Virus record (IMG/VR): IMGVR_UViG_3300027996_002186
Location: 248,001 to 312,000 of that record
DNA: 64,000 bases
Strand: one strand, 5' to 3'
Shown: positions 30,862 through 43,283 of the stretch, piece by piece
Layout of the letters: every line of letters begins with the position of its first letter
How positions within the stretch are numbered: the first letter of the stretch is position 1
Position numbers and translations under genes: made by a program
Notes under the pieces: generated by a model
Told to the model about the DNA's origin: nothing
What the model saw: only the letters and a program-made list of their open reading frames with translations
The model's database searches: none

Positions 30862-31022
30862 TTATTTCTGTGAATATGAGAAGAATAATTTTTACATATA
30901 ATGATAAAGTTCATAAGGGGATAGTTATTCCTGATAAAATGTTTTGGGGTAATTATAAAATTATATCAGATAATATGATTTTATCATATAGTTTAATTGA
31001 AAAAAAAATAATAAAAATAGAT

Positions 31023-31418
31023 ATGTTACTAAGAGAACAAATTAGCAAAGACTACATGACAGCTTTCAAAGAAAGAAATTTAGTAGCAAAGAGTTTACTT
31101 TCTGTTATTAAGGGAGAAATCCAAACAATTGAAAAAAACAAAATAAAAGAACTATCTGATGAAGAAGTAATGGCTATTTTGTTAAAAACAGCTAAGTCTC
31201 TAAAAGAAACTATTAAGTATGGTGGGGTTCAAGCATCTCTAGAATTAGCTATTGTTGAAGCTTACTTACCAAAACAAATGTCAAGAGAAGAAGTAACTGA
31301 AAAGTTAACTGAGCTTGTAAACTCTGGTGTCACTAAAATGGGTGTTGTTATGAAGGAGTTCGCTGGGTTCAACGACAAGAAGATGGTTTCTGAAATTTTC
31401 AGAGAATTAACAAAATAA
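31023..31418 (+). CDS. yqeY: GatB/YqeY domain protein
   Basis: Start moved to MLLREQISKDYMTAFKER; LSDEEV, VEAYLPKQMSREE, MGVVMK. Confidence 0.85.
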   Translation: MLLREQISKDYMTAFKERNLVAKSLLSVIKGEIQTIEKNKIKELSDEEVMAILLKTAKSLKETIKYGGVQASLELAIVEAYLPKQMSREEVTEKLTELVNSGVTKMGVVMKEFAGFNDKKMVSEIFRELTK

Positions 31419-31610: not shown

Positions 31611-31823
31611 ATGAGTGATTTTAAACCAAGTGGTATAATAACAGAGCGTGATTATACTGGGAAAACATTGGAAGAAGCAACAAATGAAGCTCGCAAACGT
31701 GGATTTGTAGTTAGAATAGTTGAAACTAATGGTAATTCTGTAATGTTAGATATGTCTGTTAGTGGATCTAGAATAAATTTCAGAGTATCTAATGGTATTA
31801 TAACAGCAGCTTTCGGTGGATAA
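31611..31823 (+). CDS. Peptidase inhibitor I78-like small protein
   Basis: YTGKTLEEA...VRIV...MLDMSVSGSRINFRVSNGIITAAFGG resembles I78 xMDYRxDRxN pattern. Confidence 0.5.
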   Translation: MSDFKPSGIITERDYTGKTLEEATNEARKRGFVVRIVETNGNSVMLDMSVSGSRINFRVSNGIITAAFGG

Positions 31824-31824
31824 T

Positions 31825-32247
31825 ATGATGTATAAGATAGATAAACAACAAGCATATCATTCCTTTACGGTTATGCCCAAAGATTGTAATTTCAATAAAA
31901 GGGATAATGGCGGTAATGATACACTATTTGGAGGTAAGTTAATGTATGAGATGGATTATGCTGGTGCTAAAATAGCTAGAAGAGCTACTTATGGTATCGA
32001 TATTGACATGATAGTAACTGCTTCAACTGACAGGATTAACTTTGAGAAACCTGCCTTTATTGGTGATTTGGTAACTATGGAAGCCACTATTAAAGCTTAT
32101 GGTAAATCATCTATACAAATACGTATAAAGGTAAGGAGAGAAGATTTGAAAGGTGAGGTAGAACAAATTTGCTCAGCTAATATGACTTTTGTTACTATAA
32201 AAGGTGGTAAGCCGATAACTCATGGATTATGCTTTACTAAAAATTAA
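31825..32247 (+). CDS. Acyl-CoA thioesterase (hotdog fold, YciA-like)
   Basis: VMPKDCN, LFGGKLMYEMD, VTAS, INFEKPAFIGD, ANMTFV. Confidence 0.85.
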   Translation: MMYKIDKQQAYHSFTVMPKDCNFNKRDNGGNDTLFGGKLMYEMDYAGAKIARRATYGIDIDMIVTASTDRINFEKPAFIGDLVTMEATIKAYGKSSIQIRIKVRREDLKGEVEQICSANMTFVTIKGGKPITHGLCFTKN

Positions 32248-32697: not shown

Positions 32698-32751
32698 TAC
32701 CAGCTACACATTATATATGTATAGCCTAGTCAATTTTGACTGGGTTTTTTT
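32683..32751 (+). promoter_or_regulatory. Attenuator: antiterminator/terminator switch
   Basis: ATTGACTGGG (32683-32692) pairs with CCTAGTCAAT (32725-32734), mutually exclusive with terminator CCTAGTCA/TGACTGGG (32725-32744) followed by T7. Confidence 0.75.
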
Positions 32752-32784
32752 ATGCAAAAAATAAATGATTAAAAAATTATAAAG

Positions 32785-33420
32785 ATGGAAATTAAAATTG
32801 ATAGTACTTACAAAGGAACAAGAATCCTTTTTGCGGAAACAGCTAAGAGTAAACGAGTTTTACTTAATGATATGATTGAAATACTTGAGTCTTATGGATA
32901 TCAAGAAATTATGATACCTATCATTCAAAAGCAAGAAACTTTCGAATTGAAGGTTGGTGATGAAAACCAAAATATGATGTATAACTTCAAAGACAGAGGT
33001 AACAGAGATTTATGTTTATCACCAGAATACACAGCAATTGTTCAACAATTAGCTTCTAATAGAATGAAATTTGACAAAGATGTTAAGATGTTCTACATAG
33101 GAGAATGTTTTCGTGGAGAGAATACGCAAAGGGGTAGATGGAGACAATTTACACAATTTGGTGTTGAAGTCTTGAATCCAAGTAAAGATTACTCAGACGA
33201 GATGGTTGAAATTGCTACTAAACTAATTCAATTAGTTACAAAAAATTATGAACTAAACACAGAAGCAACAAGAGGTCTAGATTACTATGATGGTGGAAAA
33301 GGATTCGAAATCGCTTGTCCTGAGTTGGGAGCCGCTAAACAAATTTGTGGAGGTGGGTCTTATAAAGGAGGAGTAGGGTTTGCAATAGGTGTGGATAGAT
33401 TACTATTATGCAACAAATAA
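32785..33420 (+). CDS. hisS: Minimal histidyl-tRNA synthetase catalytic domain
   Basis: LSPEYT, motif 2 FRGENTQRGRWRQFTQFGVE, RGLDYY, GGGSY, motif 3 GFAIGVDRL; only 211 aa, no anticodon domain. Confidence 0.85.
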   Translation: MEIKIDSTYKGTRILFAETAKSKRVLLNDMIEILESYGYQEIMIPIIQKQETFELKVGDENQNMMYNFKDRGNRDLCLSPEYTAIVQQLASNRMKFDKDVKMFYIGECFRGENTQRGRWRQFTQFGVEVLNPSKDYSDEMVEIATKLIQLVTKNYELNTEATRGLDYYDGGKGFEIACPELGAAKQICGGGSYKGGVGFAIGVDRLLLCNK

Positions 33421-33451
33421 GATATTTAAATTTTAATAAAGTAAGTGATAG

Positions 33452-33562
33452 ATGGGCATCGATGTAAAAATCACATTTAAGACTGTTAAAGAACAACGAA
33501 AGTTTATTAATAGTCATGAGACCATACTTTATTACCAACACTATATGTCCCTACACTCATAA
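33452..33562 (+). CDS. Possible 36 aa ORF
   Basis: MGIDVKITFKTVKEQRKFINSHETILYYQHYMSLHS; no recognised motif. Confidence 0.3.
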   Translation: MGIDVKITFKTVKEQRKFINSHETILYYQHYMSLHS

Positions 33563-33576
33563 ACTATGTATATTTT

Positions 33577-34950
33577 TTAATCTGTTGTTACTATCCACCC
33601 CTTTGTTATTAAATCATTCTTAGCCGTTACTCCATCATAACCACCAGAACTTCCATCTGGAGCTATATTTGATGATATGTTTATTTGTCTACCTGTGAAT
33701 CCAGCGGTACACCCATTATTAACATTAACTAAAAATTTATTAACTTCTACAACACCAAGTGAATTATCATGCACCTCATATCGGGCATTATTAACATCAC
33801 CCCATTGTGTGAATTTTTCAAACCCATTAAGAGCGGTTAAGCCACATCCATAATATTTTACTGATACAATTATCGCATTAGATCCAGTTGGAGCTGTTAC
33901 TTGGGTTAAGTTAGGGTTATTCCATCCATCTAAATATAATTGAGGACCTTCCCATAAGGTTAAATCTTTCATATCTAGATGTCCAACTAAATCACAATCA
34001 TTGAATCGGATTATATACCAAGTGCCTAATGTAGCTCCTGGTAGTGTAACAGTTTGTAACAACGGACAGTTTTGGCAATCTATCCAGAGTTGTACACTAT
34101 TTTGCCACCCAAGAACACTAAAATCAATTTCATTAACTGCTGTGTCGTATATACTCATCGTCCTCATTGTGGAAGTTCCATCAAAATAGATATTTTGTAT
34201 ATTACCTGTGGCTCCAGTTATACCAGTACCCTTTATATGAAATTGACTATTTAAATTTTGGTTTGTGAAATCAGCATCCCAGTTGTTCGCATCCCCAGCA
34301 CTTGGACCAACAGCCACTAAATCTGACCTCCAAAAAAACTGACCTCCTGAATCAGAATTAACATCATTTAATTTTATCCTATCAAAATTAACAGTACTAC
34401 CTAGTGTGTAAAGTGAATTAAAACCACCCCACTGAGTTGTATCAAATGTACTATCCGTAATACCTTGTATATTTATCGATCCACTATTACTTCGAAAGTA
34501 TAAACTTGTATTATTACCAAGAGGAGTAGATAAGTATTGTGTTGGCATAATTATAGAAGCTGTTGCTGTGCTAGGTAAATAAAATTTCCTCATATAATTA
34601 TAATTTGAGAAATCCAAAGTTCCCCAATCAACCCCACTTGGTGCACTAAATTGCCACCCACCGAAACTATTTATGGGATCTCTACCATATACCCTTATGG
34701 TATAACTACCAGTAACACCATAAGAATGTCCCAGGAATGGACTATCATCTATATTTTGTGTATCACTACCATCACCCCAATCAATTTCAAAAGTACCGTG
34801 ATAAAAATCGTAAGATTTGGCTCCTCCATAGTTTGTAAGCGCGGGGGTAAATGCACAATTATATGTTGTGGGTGGAGAAGTTACATTAATATTTATTTCG
34901 ATATAATCATTCTCATTCTTTTCTCTAAATTGTCTGCTAAGTCCTATCAT
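33577..34950 (-). CDS. Fibre-associated / receptor-binding protein with PKD-like and LRR-like repeats
   Basis: IDWGDG...HSYGVTGSYTI; repeated NxxLxxVxxP units. Confidence 0.6.
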   Translation of the reverse strand: MIGLSRQFREKNENDYIEININVTSPPTTYNCAFTPALTNYGGAKSYDFYHGTFEIDWGDGSDTQNIDDSPFLGHSYGVTGSYTIRVYGRDPINSFGGWQFSAPSGVDWGTLDFSNYNYMRKFYLPSTATASIIMPTQYLSTPLGNNTSLYFRSNSGSINIQGITDSTFDTTQWGGFNSLYTLGSTVNFDRIKLNDVNSDSGGQFFWRSDLVAVGPSAGDANNWDADFTNQNLNSQFHIKGTGITGATGNIQNIYFDGTSTMRTMSIYDTAVNEIDFSVLGWQNSVQLWIDCQNCPLLQTVTLPGATLGTWYIIRFNDCDLVGHLDMKDLTLWEGPQLYLDGWNNPNLTQVTAPTGSNAIIVSVKYYGCGLTALNGFEKFTQWGDVNNARYEVHDNSLGVVEVNKFLVNVNNGCTAGFTGRQINISSNIAPDGSSGGYDGVTAKNDLITKGWIVTTD

Positions 34951-43054: not shown

Positions 43055-43126
<72 letters not shown>

Positions 43127-43283
43127 CTAAAAGAGAAGAAATTCCCAAATAAATGAAAATAAATTTGGTTAGAAATAACTAAATGTTAAATAACTGGAGT
43201 TTTTTAATTTATTCTAAATATGTAATAATCTACTCTATGTAAATAATTTTCGGATTCAAATAGTTTATATGCTTTTAAGTATC

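What the first reader, a model, noticed from the sequence alone, without database searches (positions are those of the whole stretch)
32785..33420. Half-size HisRS lacking insertion and anticodon domains
Seen: 211 aa retaining class II motifs 1-3 and the His-pocket signatures RGLDYY and GGxY, ending six residues after motif 3, with no downstream partner ORF. Established: bacterial HisRS is about 420 aa and identifies tRNA-His mainly by G-1; HisZ paralogues lose RGLDYY. Inference: a natural minimal (urzyme-like) synthetase that is anticodon-blind and might charge cleaved tRNAs, or one repurposed for His-AMP/Ap4A chemistry.
Basis: partly seen in the sequence, partly recalled or inferred. Interest (0 to 1): 0.65.

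Follow-up and report, generated by a model that had tools for sequence, protein, structure and literature searches.

The report
Half-size histidyl-tRNA synthetase of giant phages
A marine giant phage encodes an intact, conserved 211-residue histidyl-tRNA synthetase reduced to its catalytic core; if active, this widespread family often found next to tRNA-His genes would be among the smallest natural tRNA-charging enzymes.

Summary
Window 32785-33420 (+) encodes a 211-aa protein that is the HisRS catalytic core. It keeps motifs 1-3, LxPExT, RGLDYY and GGGSY. Compared with full-length HisRS it lacks about 100 aa of insertion domain, an 11-aa loop before motif 3, and about 100 aa of anticodon-binding domain.

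It is not a truncation or an assembly error. Independent metagenome assemblies show no indel. More than 80 viral loci and dozens of 50%-identity clusters share the same ~200-220-aa form. dN/dS against the window gene is 0.06-0.28. One member carries an intein inside the His-binding signature. On the tree, all short forms sit on one side of a single well-supported branch.

No anticodon domain exists anywhere in these phage genomes that could act as a split partner. The model folds confidently onto E. coli HisRS, and a canonical dimer is predicted.

The gene is repeatedly embedded in tRNA arrays, in phages and in some bacteria. tRNA-His (G-1, mostly C73) is often its immediate neighbour, although the window's own phage has no tRNA-His.

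Best reading (about 0.6): a genuine, anticodon-blind HisRS that reads only the acceptor stem. "Urzyme-like" overstates the reduction. The ideas about cleaved tRNAs and Ap4A are untested. The family is annotated as HisRS in databases, but I found no description of this architecture.

The parts
32785..33420 (+). Mini-HisRS coding sequence, 211 aa plus TAA stop
   Evidence: AF2 model pLDDT 90.1; Foldseek TMq 0.83-0.87 to E. coli HisRS.
32812..32823 (+). N-terminal K10-G-T-R13 motif. It corresponds to the HisRS 'RGTRD' motif; Tt Arg7 contacts the acceptor-stem backbone.
   Evidence: Alignment. In the short family, position 10 is R/K in 24 of 35, G11 in 33 of 35, T12 in 29 of 35. Role of Arg7 from PMC4357726.
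32896..32931 (+). Motif 1 region (about residues 38-49, ...GYQEIMIPIIQK), the core of the predicted dimer interface
   Evidence: Predicted interface residues 40-49 have the least expected error. P45 is nearly invariant.
32992..33033 (+). D70-R-G-N-R74 loop (equivalent to the cross-subunit G-1 pocket, Tt 70'DRGGR74') followed by L78-S-P-E-Y-T83 (histidine-binding 'LRPEGT' signature)
   Evidence: L78, P80 and E81 are invariant and T83 is nearly invariant. Pocket role from PMC4357726. In P0122 an intein is inserted between Y82 and T83.
33106..33168 (+). Motif 2 and its loop, C108-FRGENTQRGRWRQFTQFGVE128. It carries the ATP-binding arginines and the acceptor-end contacts.
   Evidence: R110, R118, F122, Q124, G126 and E128 are invariant; Q115, G117 and R120 are nearly invariant. 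N113 replaces the Arg (Tt R115) that most family members keep.
33243..33244 (+). Junction where full-length HisRS carries the ~100-aa insertion domain (after residue 153)
   Evidence: 92-112 residues of 12 full-length relatives fall in this gap; 33 of 34 short members have nothing there, and one (P0151) has 12 residues.
33271..33288 (+). HisA signature R163-GLDYY168
   Evidence: R163 and Y168 are invariant; G164 and Y167 are nearly invariant.
33349..33405 (+). HisB signature G189-GGSY193, a shortened linker (the 10-11-aa loop of full-length HisRS is missing after residue 195), and motif 3 G196..GFAIGVDRLL207
   Evidence: G190, G191, G198, G202 and R205 are invariant. Loop deletion.
32723..32756 (+). 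Terminator-like hairpin plus T-run 39 nt upstream of the start codon. It separates the gene from the upstream YqeY / PASTA-like / thioesterase / orf100 block.
   Evidence: 10-pair stem, 2 terminator-like sites found against 0.5 expected in shuffles.

Best explanation
The gene encodes a functional, homodimeric, minimal histidyl-tRNA synthetase. It activates histidine with ATP using the complete class II/HisRS active site. It then transfers histidine to tRNA-His, which it recognises only through the acceptor end: the G-1 5'-phosphate, G-1:C73 and the CCA end. These contacts come from the motif 2 loop, the N-terminal K/RGTR motif and the cross-subunit DxGxR loop. The protein has no clamp from an insertion domain and cannot read the anticodon. 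Shown here: the architecture, conservation of the catalytic and acceptor-contact residues, the fold, purifying selection, family breadth, and the genomic association with tRNA arrays and tRNA-His. Inferred: histidine activation, dimerisation in the cell, and tRNA-His as the acceptor. In phages that carry their own tRNA-His, the enzyme and the tRNA would form a portable pair. In the window's phage, which has no tRNA-His in about 492 kb of sequence, it would top up charging of host tRNA-His during infection.
For: 1) All residues that define HisRS chemistry are kept, and they are invariant or nearly so across 30 diverse short members. They are E81 and T83; R110, E112, R118, Q124 and E128; R163, Y167 and Y168; G189-191 and Y193; and R205. 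2) Residues whose known role is tRNA acceptor binding are also conserved in the family (roles from PMC4357726). They are K/R10, Q115, R118 (C74), R120 (G-1 phosphate) and the D70..R74 loop. 3) The AF2 model has pLDDT 90.1. Its best fold matches are E. coli HisRS, TMq 0.83-0.87 over the whole query. The next group is the small anticodon-blind PylRS enzymes. 4) Homodimer prediction scored 0.88 against a best of 3 controls of 0.00. That mark was reached by 20 of 30 proteins solved as pairs of one chain and 1 of 23 solved as single chains. The runs agree in at least 97% of contacts and partner pLDDT is at least 85. The interface is the N-terminus, motif 1 and the 63-78 loop. 5) dN/dS against the window gene is 0.06-0.28 for the 31 pairs where dS could be estimated. 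An intein with a homing endonuclease sits between PEY and T83 in one member. 6) Context: tRNA genes lie within 10 kb at 45 of 80 viral loci, and tRNA-His at 21 of 80. tRNA-His is the immediate neighbour (13-700 bp) in L091, L122, L132, L133 and L082. It lies 275 bp upstream in Sinorhizobium phage Phosso and 2.6 kb upstream in the 634-kb relative. The gene is also inside tRNA arrays that include tRNA-His in the Thalassospira and Pararhizobium chromosomes. 7) Of 24 distinct neighbouring tRNA-His genes, 23 encode G at -1 and about three quarters have C73. 8) Phosso infects a Rhizobiales host. That order has tRNA-His without G-1, and the HisRS of that type (tested for Caulobacter) charges a G-1-type tRNA-His over 250-fold worse (PMC3064791). 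Phosso nevertheless carries a G-1:C73 tRNA-His next to its mini-HisRS. 9) Precedents: HisRS charges mini- and microhelices that carry G-1:C73 (PMC4357726). The Tupanvirus mini-AlaRS charges through the acceptor stem alone and rescues yeast (PMC10036535).
Against: No biochemistry exists for any member. Engineered truncation is costly: the 320-aa E. coli catalytic domain, which still has its insertion domain, is about 2000-fold less active (PMC3060492). [quoted passage not shown] In the window's clade the Arg equivalent to Tt R115 is Asn (N113), and Tt Glu64 is Met; Glu64 is only semi-conserved in HisRS. The window's own phage shows no tRNA-His and only 4 tRNAs in about 492 kb. The enrichment of tRNA-His among neighbouring tRNAs is modest after dereplication: it is the nearest tRNA in 3 of 12 clusters at 70% identity, roughly P = 0.05 by my estimate. 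The Pseudomonas members sit beside a GNAT and a TauD dioxygenase, not beside tRNAs. A minority of the family has lost catalytic residues. The dimer pass may reflect the model's memory of solved HisRS dimers.
Confidence: 0.6

Rival explanations
1. The protein is a histidine-adenylating enzyme whose acceptor is not tRNA-His in translation. It could histidylate a small molecule, a carrier or another protein. It could also supply His-AMP or His-tRNA to a partner transferase. This would resemble other truncated synthetase paralogues: AsnA, PoxA/EpmA, the amino acid:carrier-protein ligases and YadB.
For: Known synthetase paralogues that lack anticodon domains usually have non-canonical acceptors (review PMC9437257). 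The Pseudomonas and Chromobacterium short copies nest within the short family. They lie directly behind a GNAT acetyltransferase and beside a TauD-family dioxygenase and a LysR regulator, with no tRNA within 3 kb except one tRNA-Gln about 2 kb away in L166. The window's phage has no tRNA-His.
Against: The phage members have no conserved protein-coding neighbour. YqeY, the thioesterase and the RNA ligases are each confined to close relatives. The recurrent neighbours are tRNA genes. Residues that contact only the tRNA acceptor end stay conserved. The Pseudomonas clade is N-terminally shortened and derived, so it may be a secondary recruitment.
Confidence: 0.15
2. The protein is an anticodon-blind HisRS specialised for damaged tRNA. 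It would keep charging tRNA-His whose anticodon loop has been nicked or is being repaired after attack by host anticodon nucleases, working together with phage RNA ligases.
For: RNA-ligase genes (PF09414) lie directly upstream or downstream of the homologue in the 634- and 642-kb relatives and in 4-6 related contigs. [quoted passage not shown] An enzyme without an anticodon domain cannot be affected by the state of the anticodon loop.
Against: The ligase neighbours are restricted to the window's close relatives and are absent from the window itself. Divergent lineages show tRNA arrays rather than repair genes. A nicked tRNA would still be useless to the ribosome until repaired, so the benefit is unclear. 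There is no direct evidence.
Confidence: 0.1
3. The protein is a non-catalytic or regulatory factor. It could be a HisZ-like regulator, a decoy that binds or sequesters tRNA-His, or a subunit that forms mixed dimers with host HisRS to alter host charging.
For: HisZ shows that a HisRS core can become a regulator. The dimer interface is retained, so mixed dimers are conceivable. A subset of short members has lost RGLDYY and the motif 2 arginines: P0130, P0151, P0152, P0157, P0161, P0203, P0204, P0211 and P0225. Four of these fall in the window's own well-supported clade.
Against: The window protein and most of the family keep every catalytic residue under purifying selection, which a pure binder would not need. 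No HisG is found in five phage genomes. HisZ models score far below hisS: 96 against 155 bits.
Confidence: 0.1
4. The gene is a pseudogene, a gene fragment or an assembly artefact of a full-length hisS.
For: It is half the normal length, and NCBIfam hisS scores below its equivalog cut-off.
Against: Stop-to-stop frames are mostly 205-235 aa at 80 viral loci, and 75 of 80 end within 17 residues of the end of the match. The internal deletions are clean and identical across the family. dN/dS is 0.06-0.28. Independent assemblies agree with no indel. No anticodon domain exists elsewhere in the genome. The fold is confident.
Confidence: 0.01

Closest known systems
Canonical bacterial/archaeal HisRS (class IIa; e.g. 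E. coli 1KMM/2EL9, T. thermophilus 4RDX)
   Same: The catalytic fold is the same (TMq 0.83-0.87). Motifs 1-3 and the HisRS-specific LxPExT, RGLDYY and GGGxY signatures are kept. The motif 2 loop and the N-terminal RGTR-type motif that contact the acceptor end are kept. A motif 1 dimer is predicted.
   Different: It lacks the ~100-aa insertion domain that clamps the acceptor stem, a 10-11-aa loop before motif 3, and the whole ~100-aa anticodon-binding domain. It is about 50% of normal size. It scores below the TIGR00442 equivalog cut-off. In the window's clade, Asn replaces the Arg equivalent to Tt R115.
Engineered E. coli HisRS fragments: the 320-aa N-terminal catalytic domain (Augustine & Francklyn 1997, as cited in PMC3060492) and the 119-145-aa HisRS urzymes (PMC3060492)
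   Same: They show that HisRS chemistry survives removal of the anticodon domain, and in the urzymes removal of the insertion domain too. The size here lies between the two.
   Different: Those fragments are artificial and badly impaired: about 2000-fold and 4-9 million-fold. The urzymes lack the HisA loop, and two of the four lack motif 3. This protein is natural, keeps the whole active site, and has evolved under purifying selection as a large family.
Tupanvirus mini-AlaRS (PMC10036535)
   Same: It is a virus-encoded, naturally shortened class II synthetase for a tRNA whose identity lies in the acceptor stem. It has been shown to bind and charge a microhelix and to replace the cellular enzyme in vivo.
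   Different: It is a different synthetase family from a eukaryotic giant virus. [quoted passage not shown] It has been characterised experimentally, whereas the mini-HisRS has not.
ΔN-type PylRS (e.g. Methanomethylophilus alvus PylRS, ~275 aa)
   Same: It is the second-best structural match (TMq about 0.7). It is a small natural class II synthetase that, from my own knowledge, does not read the anticodon.
   Different: It belongs to a different family with a different amino acid. It is still about 65 residues longer, and its tRNA recognition uses other elements.
HisZ (regulatory subunit of ATP phosphoribosyltransferase)
   Same: It is a HisRS paralogue without a functional anticodon-binding role. 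It is a weaker sequence hit (TIGR00443, 96 bits).
   Different: HisZ has no adenylation activity (PMC9437257), keeps the insertion region (about 300-390 aa) and works with HisG. Here the catalytic residues are intact and the phages have no HisG.

Membership tests
Class II aminoacyl-tRNA synthetase catalytic core | Motifs 1, 2 and 3, with the motif 2 and motif 3 arginines | tested here: met
   P45 (motif 1), R110 and R118 (motif 2) and R205 (motif 3) are invariant or nearly invariant in the family. Pfam PF00587, PF00152 and PF13393 all score above their cut-offs.
Class II aminoacyl-tRNA synthetase catalytic core | Antiparallel beta-sheet fold of the class II active site | tested here: met
   AF2 pLDDT 90.1, pTM 0.87. 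Foldseek probability 1.00 and TMq 0.83-0.87 to E. coli HisRS chains.
Class II aminoacyl-tRNA synthetase catalytic core | Homodimer through motif 1 | tested here: inconclusive
   In silico only. Score 0.88 against a best of 3 controls of 0.00. The mark was reached by 20 of 30 proteins solved as pairs of one chain and 1 of 23 solved as single chains. Runs agree in at least 97% of contacts and partner pLDDT is at least 85. The result may reflect memory of solved HisRS dimers.
Histidyl-tRNA synthetase (HisRS, TIGR00442 equivalog) | HisRS-specific histidine-pocket signatures (LRPEGT-type, RGLDYY = HisA, GGGRY = HisB) | tested here: met
   LSPEYT 78-83, RGLDYY 163-168, GGGSY 189-193.
Histidyl-tRNA synthetase (HisRS, TIGR00442 equivalog) | Whole-protein score above the curated equivalog cut-off | tested here: not met
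   155.2 bits against a cut-off of 286.75; only the first 146 of 406 model positions are covered by the best stretch.
Histidyl-tRNA synthetase (HisRS, TIGR00442 equivalog) | C-terminal HGTP anticodon-binding domain (PF03129) | tested here: not met
   The protein ends 6 residues after the motif 3 Arg. There is no PF03129 hit in G000, G001, LR745206 or LR756502.
Histidyl-tRNA synthetase (HisRS, TIGR00442 equivalog) | Insertion domain between motif 2 and the HisA loop | tested here: not met
   92-112 residues of full-length relatives have no counterpart after residue 153.
Histidyl-tRNA synthetase (HisRS, TIGR00442 equivalog) | Histidine activation and aminoacylation of tRNA-His | not testable with these tools
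   This needs ATP-PPi exchange and charging assays. The only support is indirect: residue conservation and tRNA-His neighbourhood.
HisZ | Loss of the catalytic (adenylation) residues | tested here: not met
   Catalytic residues are retained and invariant.
HisZ | Partnership with a HisG encoded in the same genome | tested here: not met
   No PF01634 hit in five phage genomes, while the control genomes all gave hits. A host HisG cannot be excluded.
HisRS urzyme (Carter) | 119-145-aa fragment containing motifs 1-2, with or without motif 3, lacking the HisA loop | tested here: not met
   211 aa with the HisA and HisB signatures and motif 3 all present. Definition from PMC3060492.

The most novel reading that the evidence does not exclude
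The roughly 200-aa mini-HisRS is catalytically competent. That would make it the smallest natural aminoacyl-tRNA synthetase known, reading only the acceptor-stem 'operational code'. It would be one of a set of minimal class II synthetases (His, plus Gly-like and Ala-like cores of ~246-248 aa in related phages) that travel with tRNA arrays on giant phages and bacterial mobile DNA. Together with their tRNAs they would form self-contained charging modules. In hosts such as Rhizobiales, whose own HisRS does not use G-1, the phage tRNA-His and mini-HisRS would be a naturally orthogonal pair.
Probability: 0.45. Interest if true: 0.85.

Novelty: new variant of a known kind. Interest (0 to 1): 0.64.

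Why it matters
Three things would follow if the enzyme is active.

1. Origin of translation. It would be a natural test of an old idea: that a class II catalytic core alone can pick its tRNA from the acceptor stem. So far this has been approached with engineered fragments that lose 10^3 to 10^6-fold activity, and with one viral AlaRS. A family shaped by selection shows which compensations make a core-only enzyme workable.

2. Phage biology. It would show that giant phages and tRNA-array elements carry compact enzyme-plus-tRNA modules, not just spare tRNAs. This bears on how they take over or buffer host translation.

3. Engineering. A 200-aa, anticodon-blind HisRS with its own tRNA is an attractive orthogonal pair. 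Yuan et al. (PMC3064791) proposed this use for G-1-type pairs in hosts whose tRNA-His lacks G-1.

Sinorhizobium phage Phosso is cultured, so the genetics can be done.

Tried and rejected
- Hidden frameshift or assembly error: rejected. There is no indel in independent contigs, and the short frame is conserved at 80 loci.
- Split gene with a separate anticodon-binding subunit: rejected. There is no PF03129 hit in the window's record or in its 483-, 634- and 642-kb relatives. Phosso's single hit lies in a 665-aa frame 400 kb away.
- Alternative genetic code or read-through: not invoked. The stop is TAA, followed by an AT-rich spacer and a convergent gene. Family stops are a TAA/TGA/TAG mixture.
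- HisZ: rejected.
- A conserved protein partner among the neighbours: not found. YqeY, the PASTA-like ORF, the 4HBT thioesterase and orf100 occur only in the window's lineage and one or two close relatives. The RNA ligases occur only in close relatives, and NADAR only in another lineage. The YqeY gene 1.4 kb upstream is a tempting trans-acting tRNA-binding helper, but its co-occurrence does not support this.
- Rfam scan of the window: only the tRNA-Met at 43055; nothing in the 260-bp upstream spacer.
- PHROGs: no informative family.
- Literature: searches for a described phage mini-HisRS found none. Al-Shayeb et al. 2020 report phage synthetases in general.
- Transcription: metatranscriptome contigs show only a ~94%-similar relative's 5' end (32771-32907) in an RNA library. 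This does not prove transcription.
- Sinorhizobium: I could not confirm from the searchable library that S. meliloti itself lacks G-1. PMC3064791 names the order Rhizobiales. My recollection that Wang et al. 2007 verified S. meliloti is from memory only.
Full report
**Observation**

The ORF at 32785-33420 (+) runs from ATG to TAA and encodes 211 aa.
- It matches Pfam tRNA-synt_His (1.3e-22) and the NCBIfam hisS equivalog (2.5e-45). The hisS score of 155 bits is below the 286.75-bit cut-off, because only the first ~146 of 406 model positions form the main match.
- Against solved HisRS structures it aligns in two blocks: residues 10-136 to S. aureus HisRS 6-138, and residues 158-209 to 252-316.
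- I aligned 34 short homologues with 12 full-length HisRS. The full-length proteins carry 92-112 residues after window residue 153 (the insertion domain). They carry 10-11 residues after residue 195 (a loop before motif 3). They carry 97-108 residues after residue 211 (the anticodon-binding domain). No short member has any of these; the only exception is one degenerate member (P0151) with 12 residues after position 153.

**Not an artefact, and no missing partner**

- The next gene downstream is convergent (33577-34950, minus strand).
- No HGTP_anticodon domain occurs anywhere in the window's 312.7-kb record, in a 483-kb record that overlaps it at 99.999% identity, or in two complete relatives of 634 and 642 kb.
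- Contigs from two independent seawater studies cover the gene without any indel. The stretch is held near-identically by marine metagenomes of at least 12 studies.
- No other genetic code was invoked.

**The genome**

The window comes from a 29% GC marine giant phage. Its relatives include LR745206 (634 kb) and LR756502 (642 kb), from the huge-phage survey of Al-Shayeb et al. Their homologues are 211 and 210 aa and 94% and 82% identical. Sinorhizobium phage Phosso (469 kb, cultured) has a 196-aa homologue, 45% identical and annotated 'histidyl-tRNA synthetase'.

**A large family under selection**

- The word-indexed search found 1,432 proteins in the 116-369-aa band. The top 120 are almost all 210-220 aa.
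- The exhaustive search of 50%-identity representatives found dozens of clusters of ~196-260 aa. These match the query as one contiguous stretch at 33-62% identity and rank ahead of ~420-aa HisRS, which match in two stretches.
- Eighty viral-contig loci have stop-to-stop frames mostly of 205-235 aa, and 75 of 80 end within 17 residues of the end of the match.
- Pairwise dN/dS against the window gene is 0.06-0.28.
- One member (P0122) is interrupted by a 360-aa intein with a LAGLIDADG endonuclease. The intein sits exactly between '...LAPEY' and 'TAVVQ...', inside the histidine-binding signature, with the near-invariant Thr as the +1 residue.
- A maximum-likelihood tree of the shared core places all 40 sampled full-length HisRS on one side of a single branch (SH-aLRT 99). 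All short forms lie on the other side. This is consistent with one origin of the short architecture. The full-length rows were the ones most similar to the query, and the tree is unrooted.

**Structure**

- AlphaFold2 with a 30-sequence alignment gives pLDDT 90.1 and pTM 0.87. The lowest confidence is in the motif 2 and HisA loops.
- Foldseek's best matches are E. coli HisRS chains (TMq 0.83-0.87 over the whole query). The next group is the small PylRS enzymes of Methanomethylophilus and relatives.
- A homodimer is predicted: score 0.88 against a best of 3 controls of 0.00.
  - That mark was reached by 20 of 30 proteins solved as pairs of one chain and by 1 of 23 solved as single chains.
  - The runs agree in at least 97% of contacts, and partner pLDDT is at least 85.
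  - The interface is formed by residues 3-31, 40-52 and 63-78.
  - This is the canonical motif 1 dimer, and it brings the D70-R74 loop to the partner's active site. The pass may reflect memory of solved HisRS dimers.

**Residues**

- Across 30 diverse catalytically intact members, these positions are invariant: L78, P80, E81, Y104, R110, R118, F122, Q124, G126, E128, R163, Y168, G190, G191, G198, G202, R205.
- These positions are nearly invariant: G11, P45, T83, Q115, G117, R120, G164, Y167, G189, Y193.
- By alignment and my knowledge of E. coli numbering, they include the equivalents of E83, T85, R113, R121, R123, Q127, E131, R259, Y263/Y264 and R311.
- Several of them have their documented role in the TtHisRS-tRNA complex in acceptor-end binding rather than adenylation (PMC4357726):
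  - Arg7 (window K10);
  - Gln117 (Q115);
  - Arg120, which reads C74 (R118);
  - Arg122, which binds the G-1 phosphate (R120);
  - the cross-subunit 70'DRGGR74' G-1 pocket (DRGNR here).
- Two departures in the window's clade are N113 in place of Tt Arg115 (R115A costs about 80% of activity) and Met in place of the semi-conserved Glu64. Most other family members keep Arg at the first position and have Gln at the second.

**Genomic context**

- No protein-coding neighbour is conserved beyond close relatives. The recurrent neighbours are tRNA genes.
- The 634-kb relative has 59 tRNAs. A His-Phe-His-Phe-Trp-Lys(x4)-Arg-Ser array ends 1.4 kb upstream of its mini-HisRS.
- Phosso has tRNA-His(GTG) 275 bp upstream.
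- In another lineage the gene sits in the middle of an 18-tRNA array.
- Of the 80 viral loci, 45 have tRNAs within 10 kb and 21 have tRNA-His. tRNA-His is the immediate neighbour (13-700 bp) in L091, L122, L132, L133/L134 and L082/L085.
- After dereplication at 70% identity, tRNA-His is the most often present isoacceptor (7 of 12 clusters that have tRNAs) and the most often nearest one (3 of 12). This is suggestive, not decisive.
- Of 24 distinct neighbouring tRNA-His genes, 23 encode G at -1. About three quarters have C73 and four have A73.
- The short form also occurs in cellular assemblies. In Thalassospira and Pararhizobium it sits inside chromosomal tRNA arrays that include tRNA-His.
- The Pararhizobium array tRNA-His genes lack an encoded G-1, and its enzyme has DRKAR in place of the glycine pocket. 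This is a single, anecdotal case of possible co-variation.
- Rhizobiales are among the lineages whose tRNA-His lacks G-1. The HisRS of this type, tested for Caulobacter, charges a G-1-type tRNA-His over 250-fold worse (PMC3064791). Phosso's adjacent G-1:C73 tRNA-His and mini-HisRS therefore look like a self-sufficient pair.

**The window's own phage is the exception**

- About 492 kb of it (G000 plus G001) holds only tRNA-Glu, -Gln, -Met and -Cys.
- The mini-HisRS is its only hit to the class II core families, and there is no hit to PF00133.
- The 90-91-aa ORF that follows the gene in the relatives is reduced to a 19-codon remnant at 33408-33467.
- The gene itself is intact and 94% identical to the relative's. 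Here the substrate would have to be host tRNA-His.
- The longest contig on record with this exact protein is 551 kb, so about 60 kb of the phage is unseen.

**Interpretation**

The best-supported reading is a genuine, dimeric, anticodon-blind HisRS that recognises tRNA-His by its acceptor end (confidence about 0.6).
- It fits established HisRS enzymology: G-1:C73 is the major determinant, the anticodon is a weak one, and mini- and microhelices are substrates (PMC4357726).
- It has a viral precedent in the Tupanvirus mini-AlaRS, which charges through the acceptor stem alone and rescues yeast (PMC10036535).
- The main caution is quantitative. The engineered 320-aa E. coli catalytic domain is about 2000-fold impaired, and the 119-145-aa urzymes 4-9 million-fold (PMC3060492).
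- Rivals: a non-tRNA or non-translational acceptor, prompted by the GNAT/TauD context of the Pseudomonas clade; a role tied to tRNA repair, prompted by RNA-ligase neighbours in close relatives; and a regulatory or decoy role, prompted by a degenerate subset of the family. HisZ is excluded.

**Novelty**

Databases already label these genes 'histidyl-tRNA synthetase' (JGI names; the Phosso record), and Al-Shayeb et al. reported phage synthetases in general. I found no description of this core-only architecture or of its link to tRNA-His arrays. I therefore rate it a new variant of a known kind. It would interest specialists in synthetase evolution and in phage translation takeover.

**Limits**

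- There is no biochemistry for any member.
- The dimer and the fold are predictions.
- The tRNA-His association rests on small numbers after dereplication.
- The expression evidence is only a relative's contig in an RNA library.

Noticed in passing
L033:8972-9712 and L033:9858-10604 (LR745206 367172-367909 and 368058-368801); also L060:16939-18549, L107:9273-9989, L130:4731-5399: The 634-kb relative carries two more short class II synthetase-like genes side by side inside a tRNA array. One is a 246-aa GlyRS-like core and the other a 248-aa AlaRS-like N-terminal catalytic fragment. Homologues recur near the mini-HisRS in other giant-phage contigs; in L107 the AlaRS-like gene ends 12 bp before it. 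They are absent from the window's phage. Minimal synthetases may be a wider habit of these phages.
   Followed up: partly
whole window and G000/G001 (window tRNA-Met at 43055-43127): The window's phage has only 4 tRNA genes (Glu, Gln, Met, Cys) in about 492 kb. Its 634-kb relative, whose mini-HisRS is 94% identical, has 59 tRNAs in five arrays within 80 kb of the gene. The arrays are missing at the syntenic places, so the tRNA complement differs greatly between close relatives.
   Followed up: partly
window 33408-33467 (+): This is a 19-codon remnant (MQQIRYLNFNKVSDRWASM*) of the 90-91-aa ORF that overlaps the mini-HisRS stop codon in LR745206 and LR756502. In those phages an RNA-ligase gene (PF09414) follows. 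In the window a convergent 457-aa ORF follows instead; it has no Pfam match and looks like a tail fibre only by eye.
   Followed up: partly
window 30870-31418 (+): A YqeY-like protein (PF09424, 1.3e-14) with a ~55-aa N-terminal extension lies 1.4 kb upstream. From my own knowledge, YqeY/GatB-type domains help tRNA binding in some synthetases, so it could be a trans-acting helper. However, it co-occurs with the mini-HisRS only in this lineage and in L059.
   Followed up: partly
window 31816-32247 (+) and 31611-31823 (+): A 4HBT hotdog-fold thioesterase (PF03061, 1.3e-13) and a 70-aa ORF with a weak, sub-threshold PASTA match lie between YqeY and the mini-HisRS. Their function in a phage is unexplained.
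   Followed up: no
window 32723-32756 (+): A terminator-like hairpin (10-pair stem plus T-run) lies 39 nt upstream of the mini-HisRS start. The gene is probably its own transcription unit, or is controlled by read-through.
   Followed up: no
P0122 (564 aa, metagenomic): This is a mini-HisRS interrupted by an intein with a LAGLIDADG homing endonuclease. The intein is inserted between PEY and T (window residues 82|83) in the histidine-binding signature.
   Followed up: yes
L163-L172 (Pseudomonas spp., Chromobacterium); e.g. L163:2146-3537: Bacterial short HisRS-like genes of 153-192 aa, shortened at the N-terminus, lie directly behind a GNAT acetyltransferase. They sit beside a TauD-family dioxygenase and a LysR regulator. 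No tRNA is nearby except one tRNA-Gln about 2 kb away in L166. This may be a small-molecule pathway that recruited the mini-HisRS.
   Followed up: partly
L173:702-776 and L173:1318-1395 (Pararhizobium sp. BT-229); mini-HisRS within L173:2890-3633: In this chromosomal tRNA array the tRNA-His genes have T at -1. One has G1-U72 and G73; the other has an ATG anticodon and A73. The adjacent mini-HisRS has DRKAR where others have the DxGGR G-1 pocket. This could be enzyme-tRNA co-variation, but it is a single case.
   Followed up: partly
tRNA-His genes in L056-L133, L032 and L001: In 23 of the 24 tRNA-His genes near a mini-HisRS on the viral contigs, plus the LR745206, Phosso and Thalassospira copies, the gene is preceded by the same trinucleotide, A-T-G(-1). 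The conserved A-T before G-1 is unexplained; it could be a processing signal.
   Followed up: no
P0130, P0151, P0161, P0204 (and P0152, P0157, P0203, P0211, P0225): A subset of short family members has lost RGLDYY and the motif 2 arginines. Four of them fall in the same strongly supported clade as the window protein. These may be pseudo-enzyme offshoots. I did not check whether they coexist with an intact copy in one genome.
   Followed up: no
L049:10635-11138 and L050:1416-1919: In one lineage a NADAR-domain protein (PF08719) directly follows the mini-HisRS inside the tRNA array. Weak NADAR homologues lie about 2 kb upstream in L123-L125.
   Followed up: no
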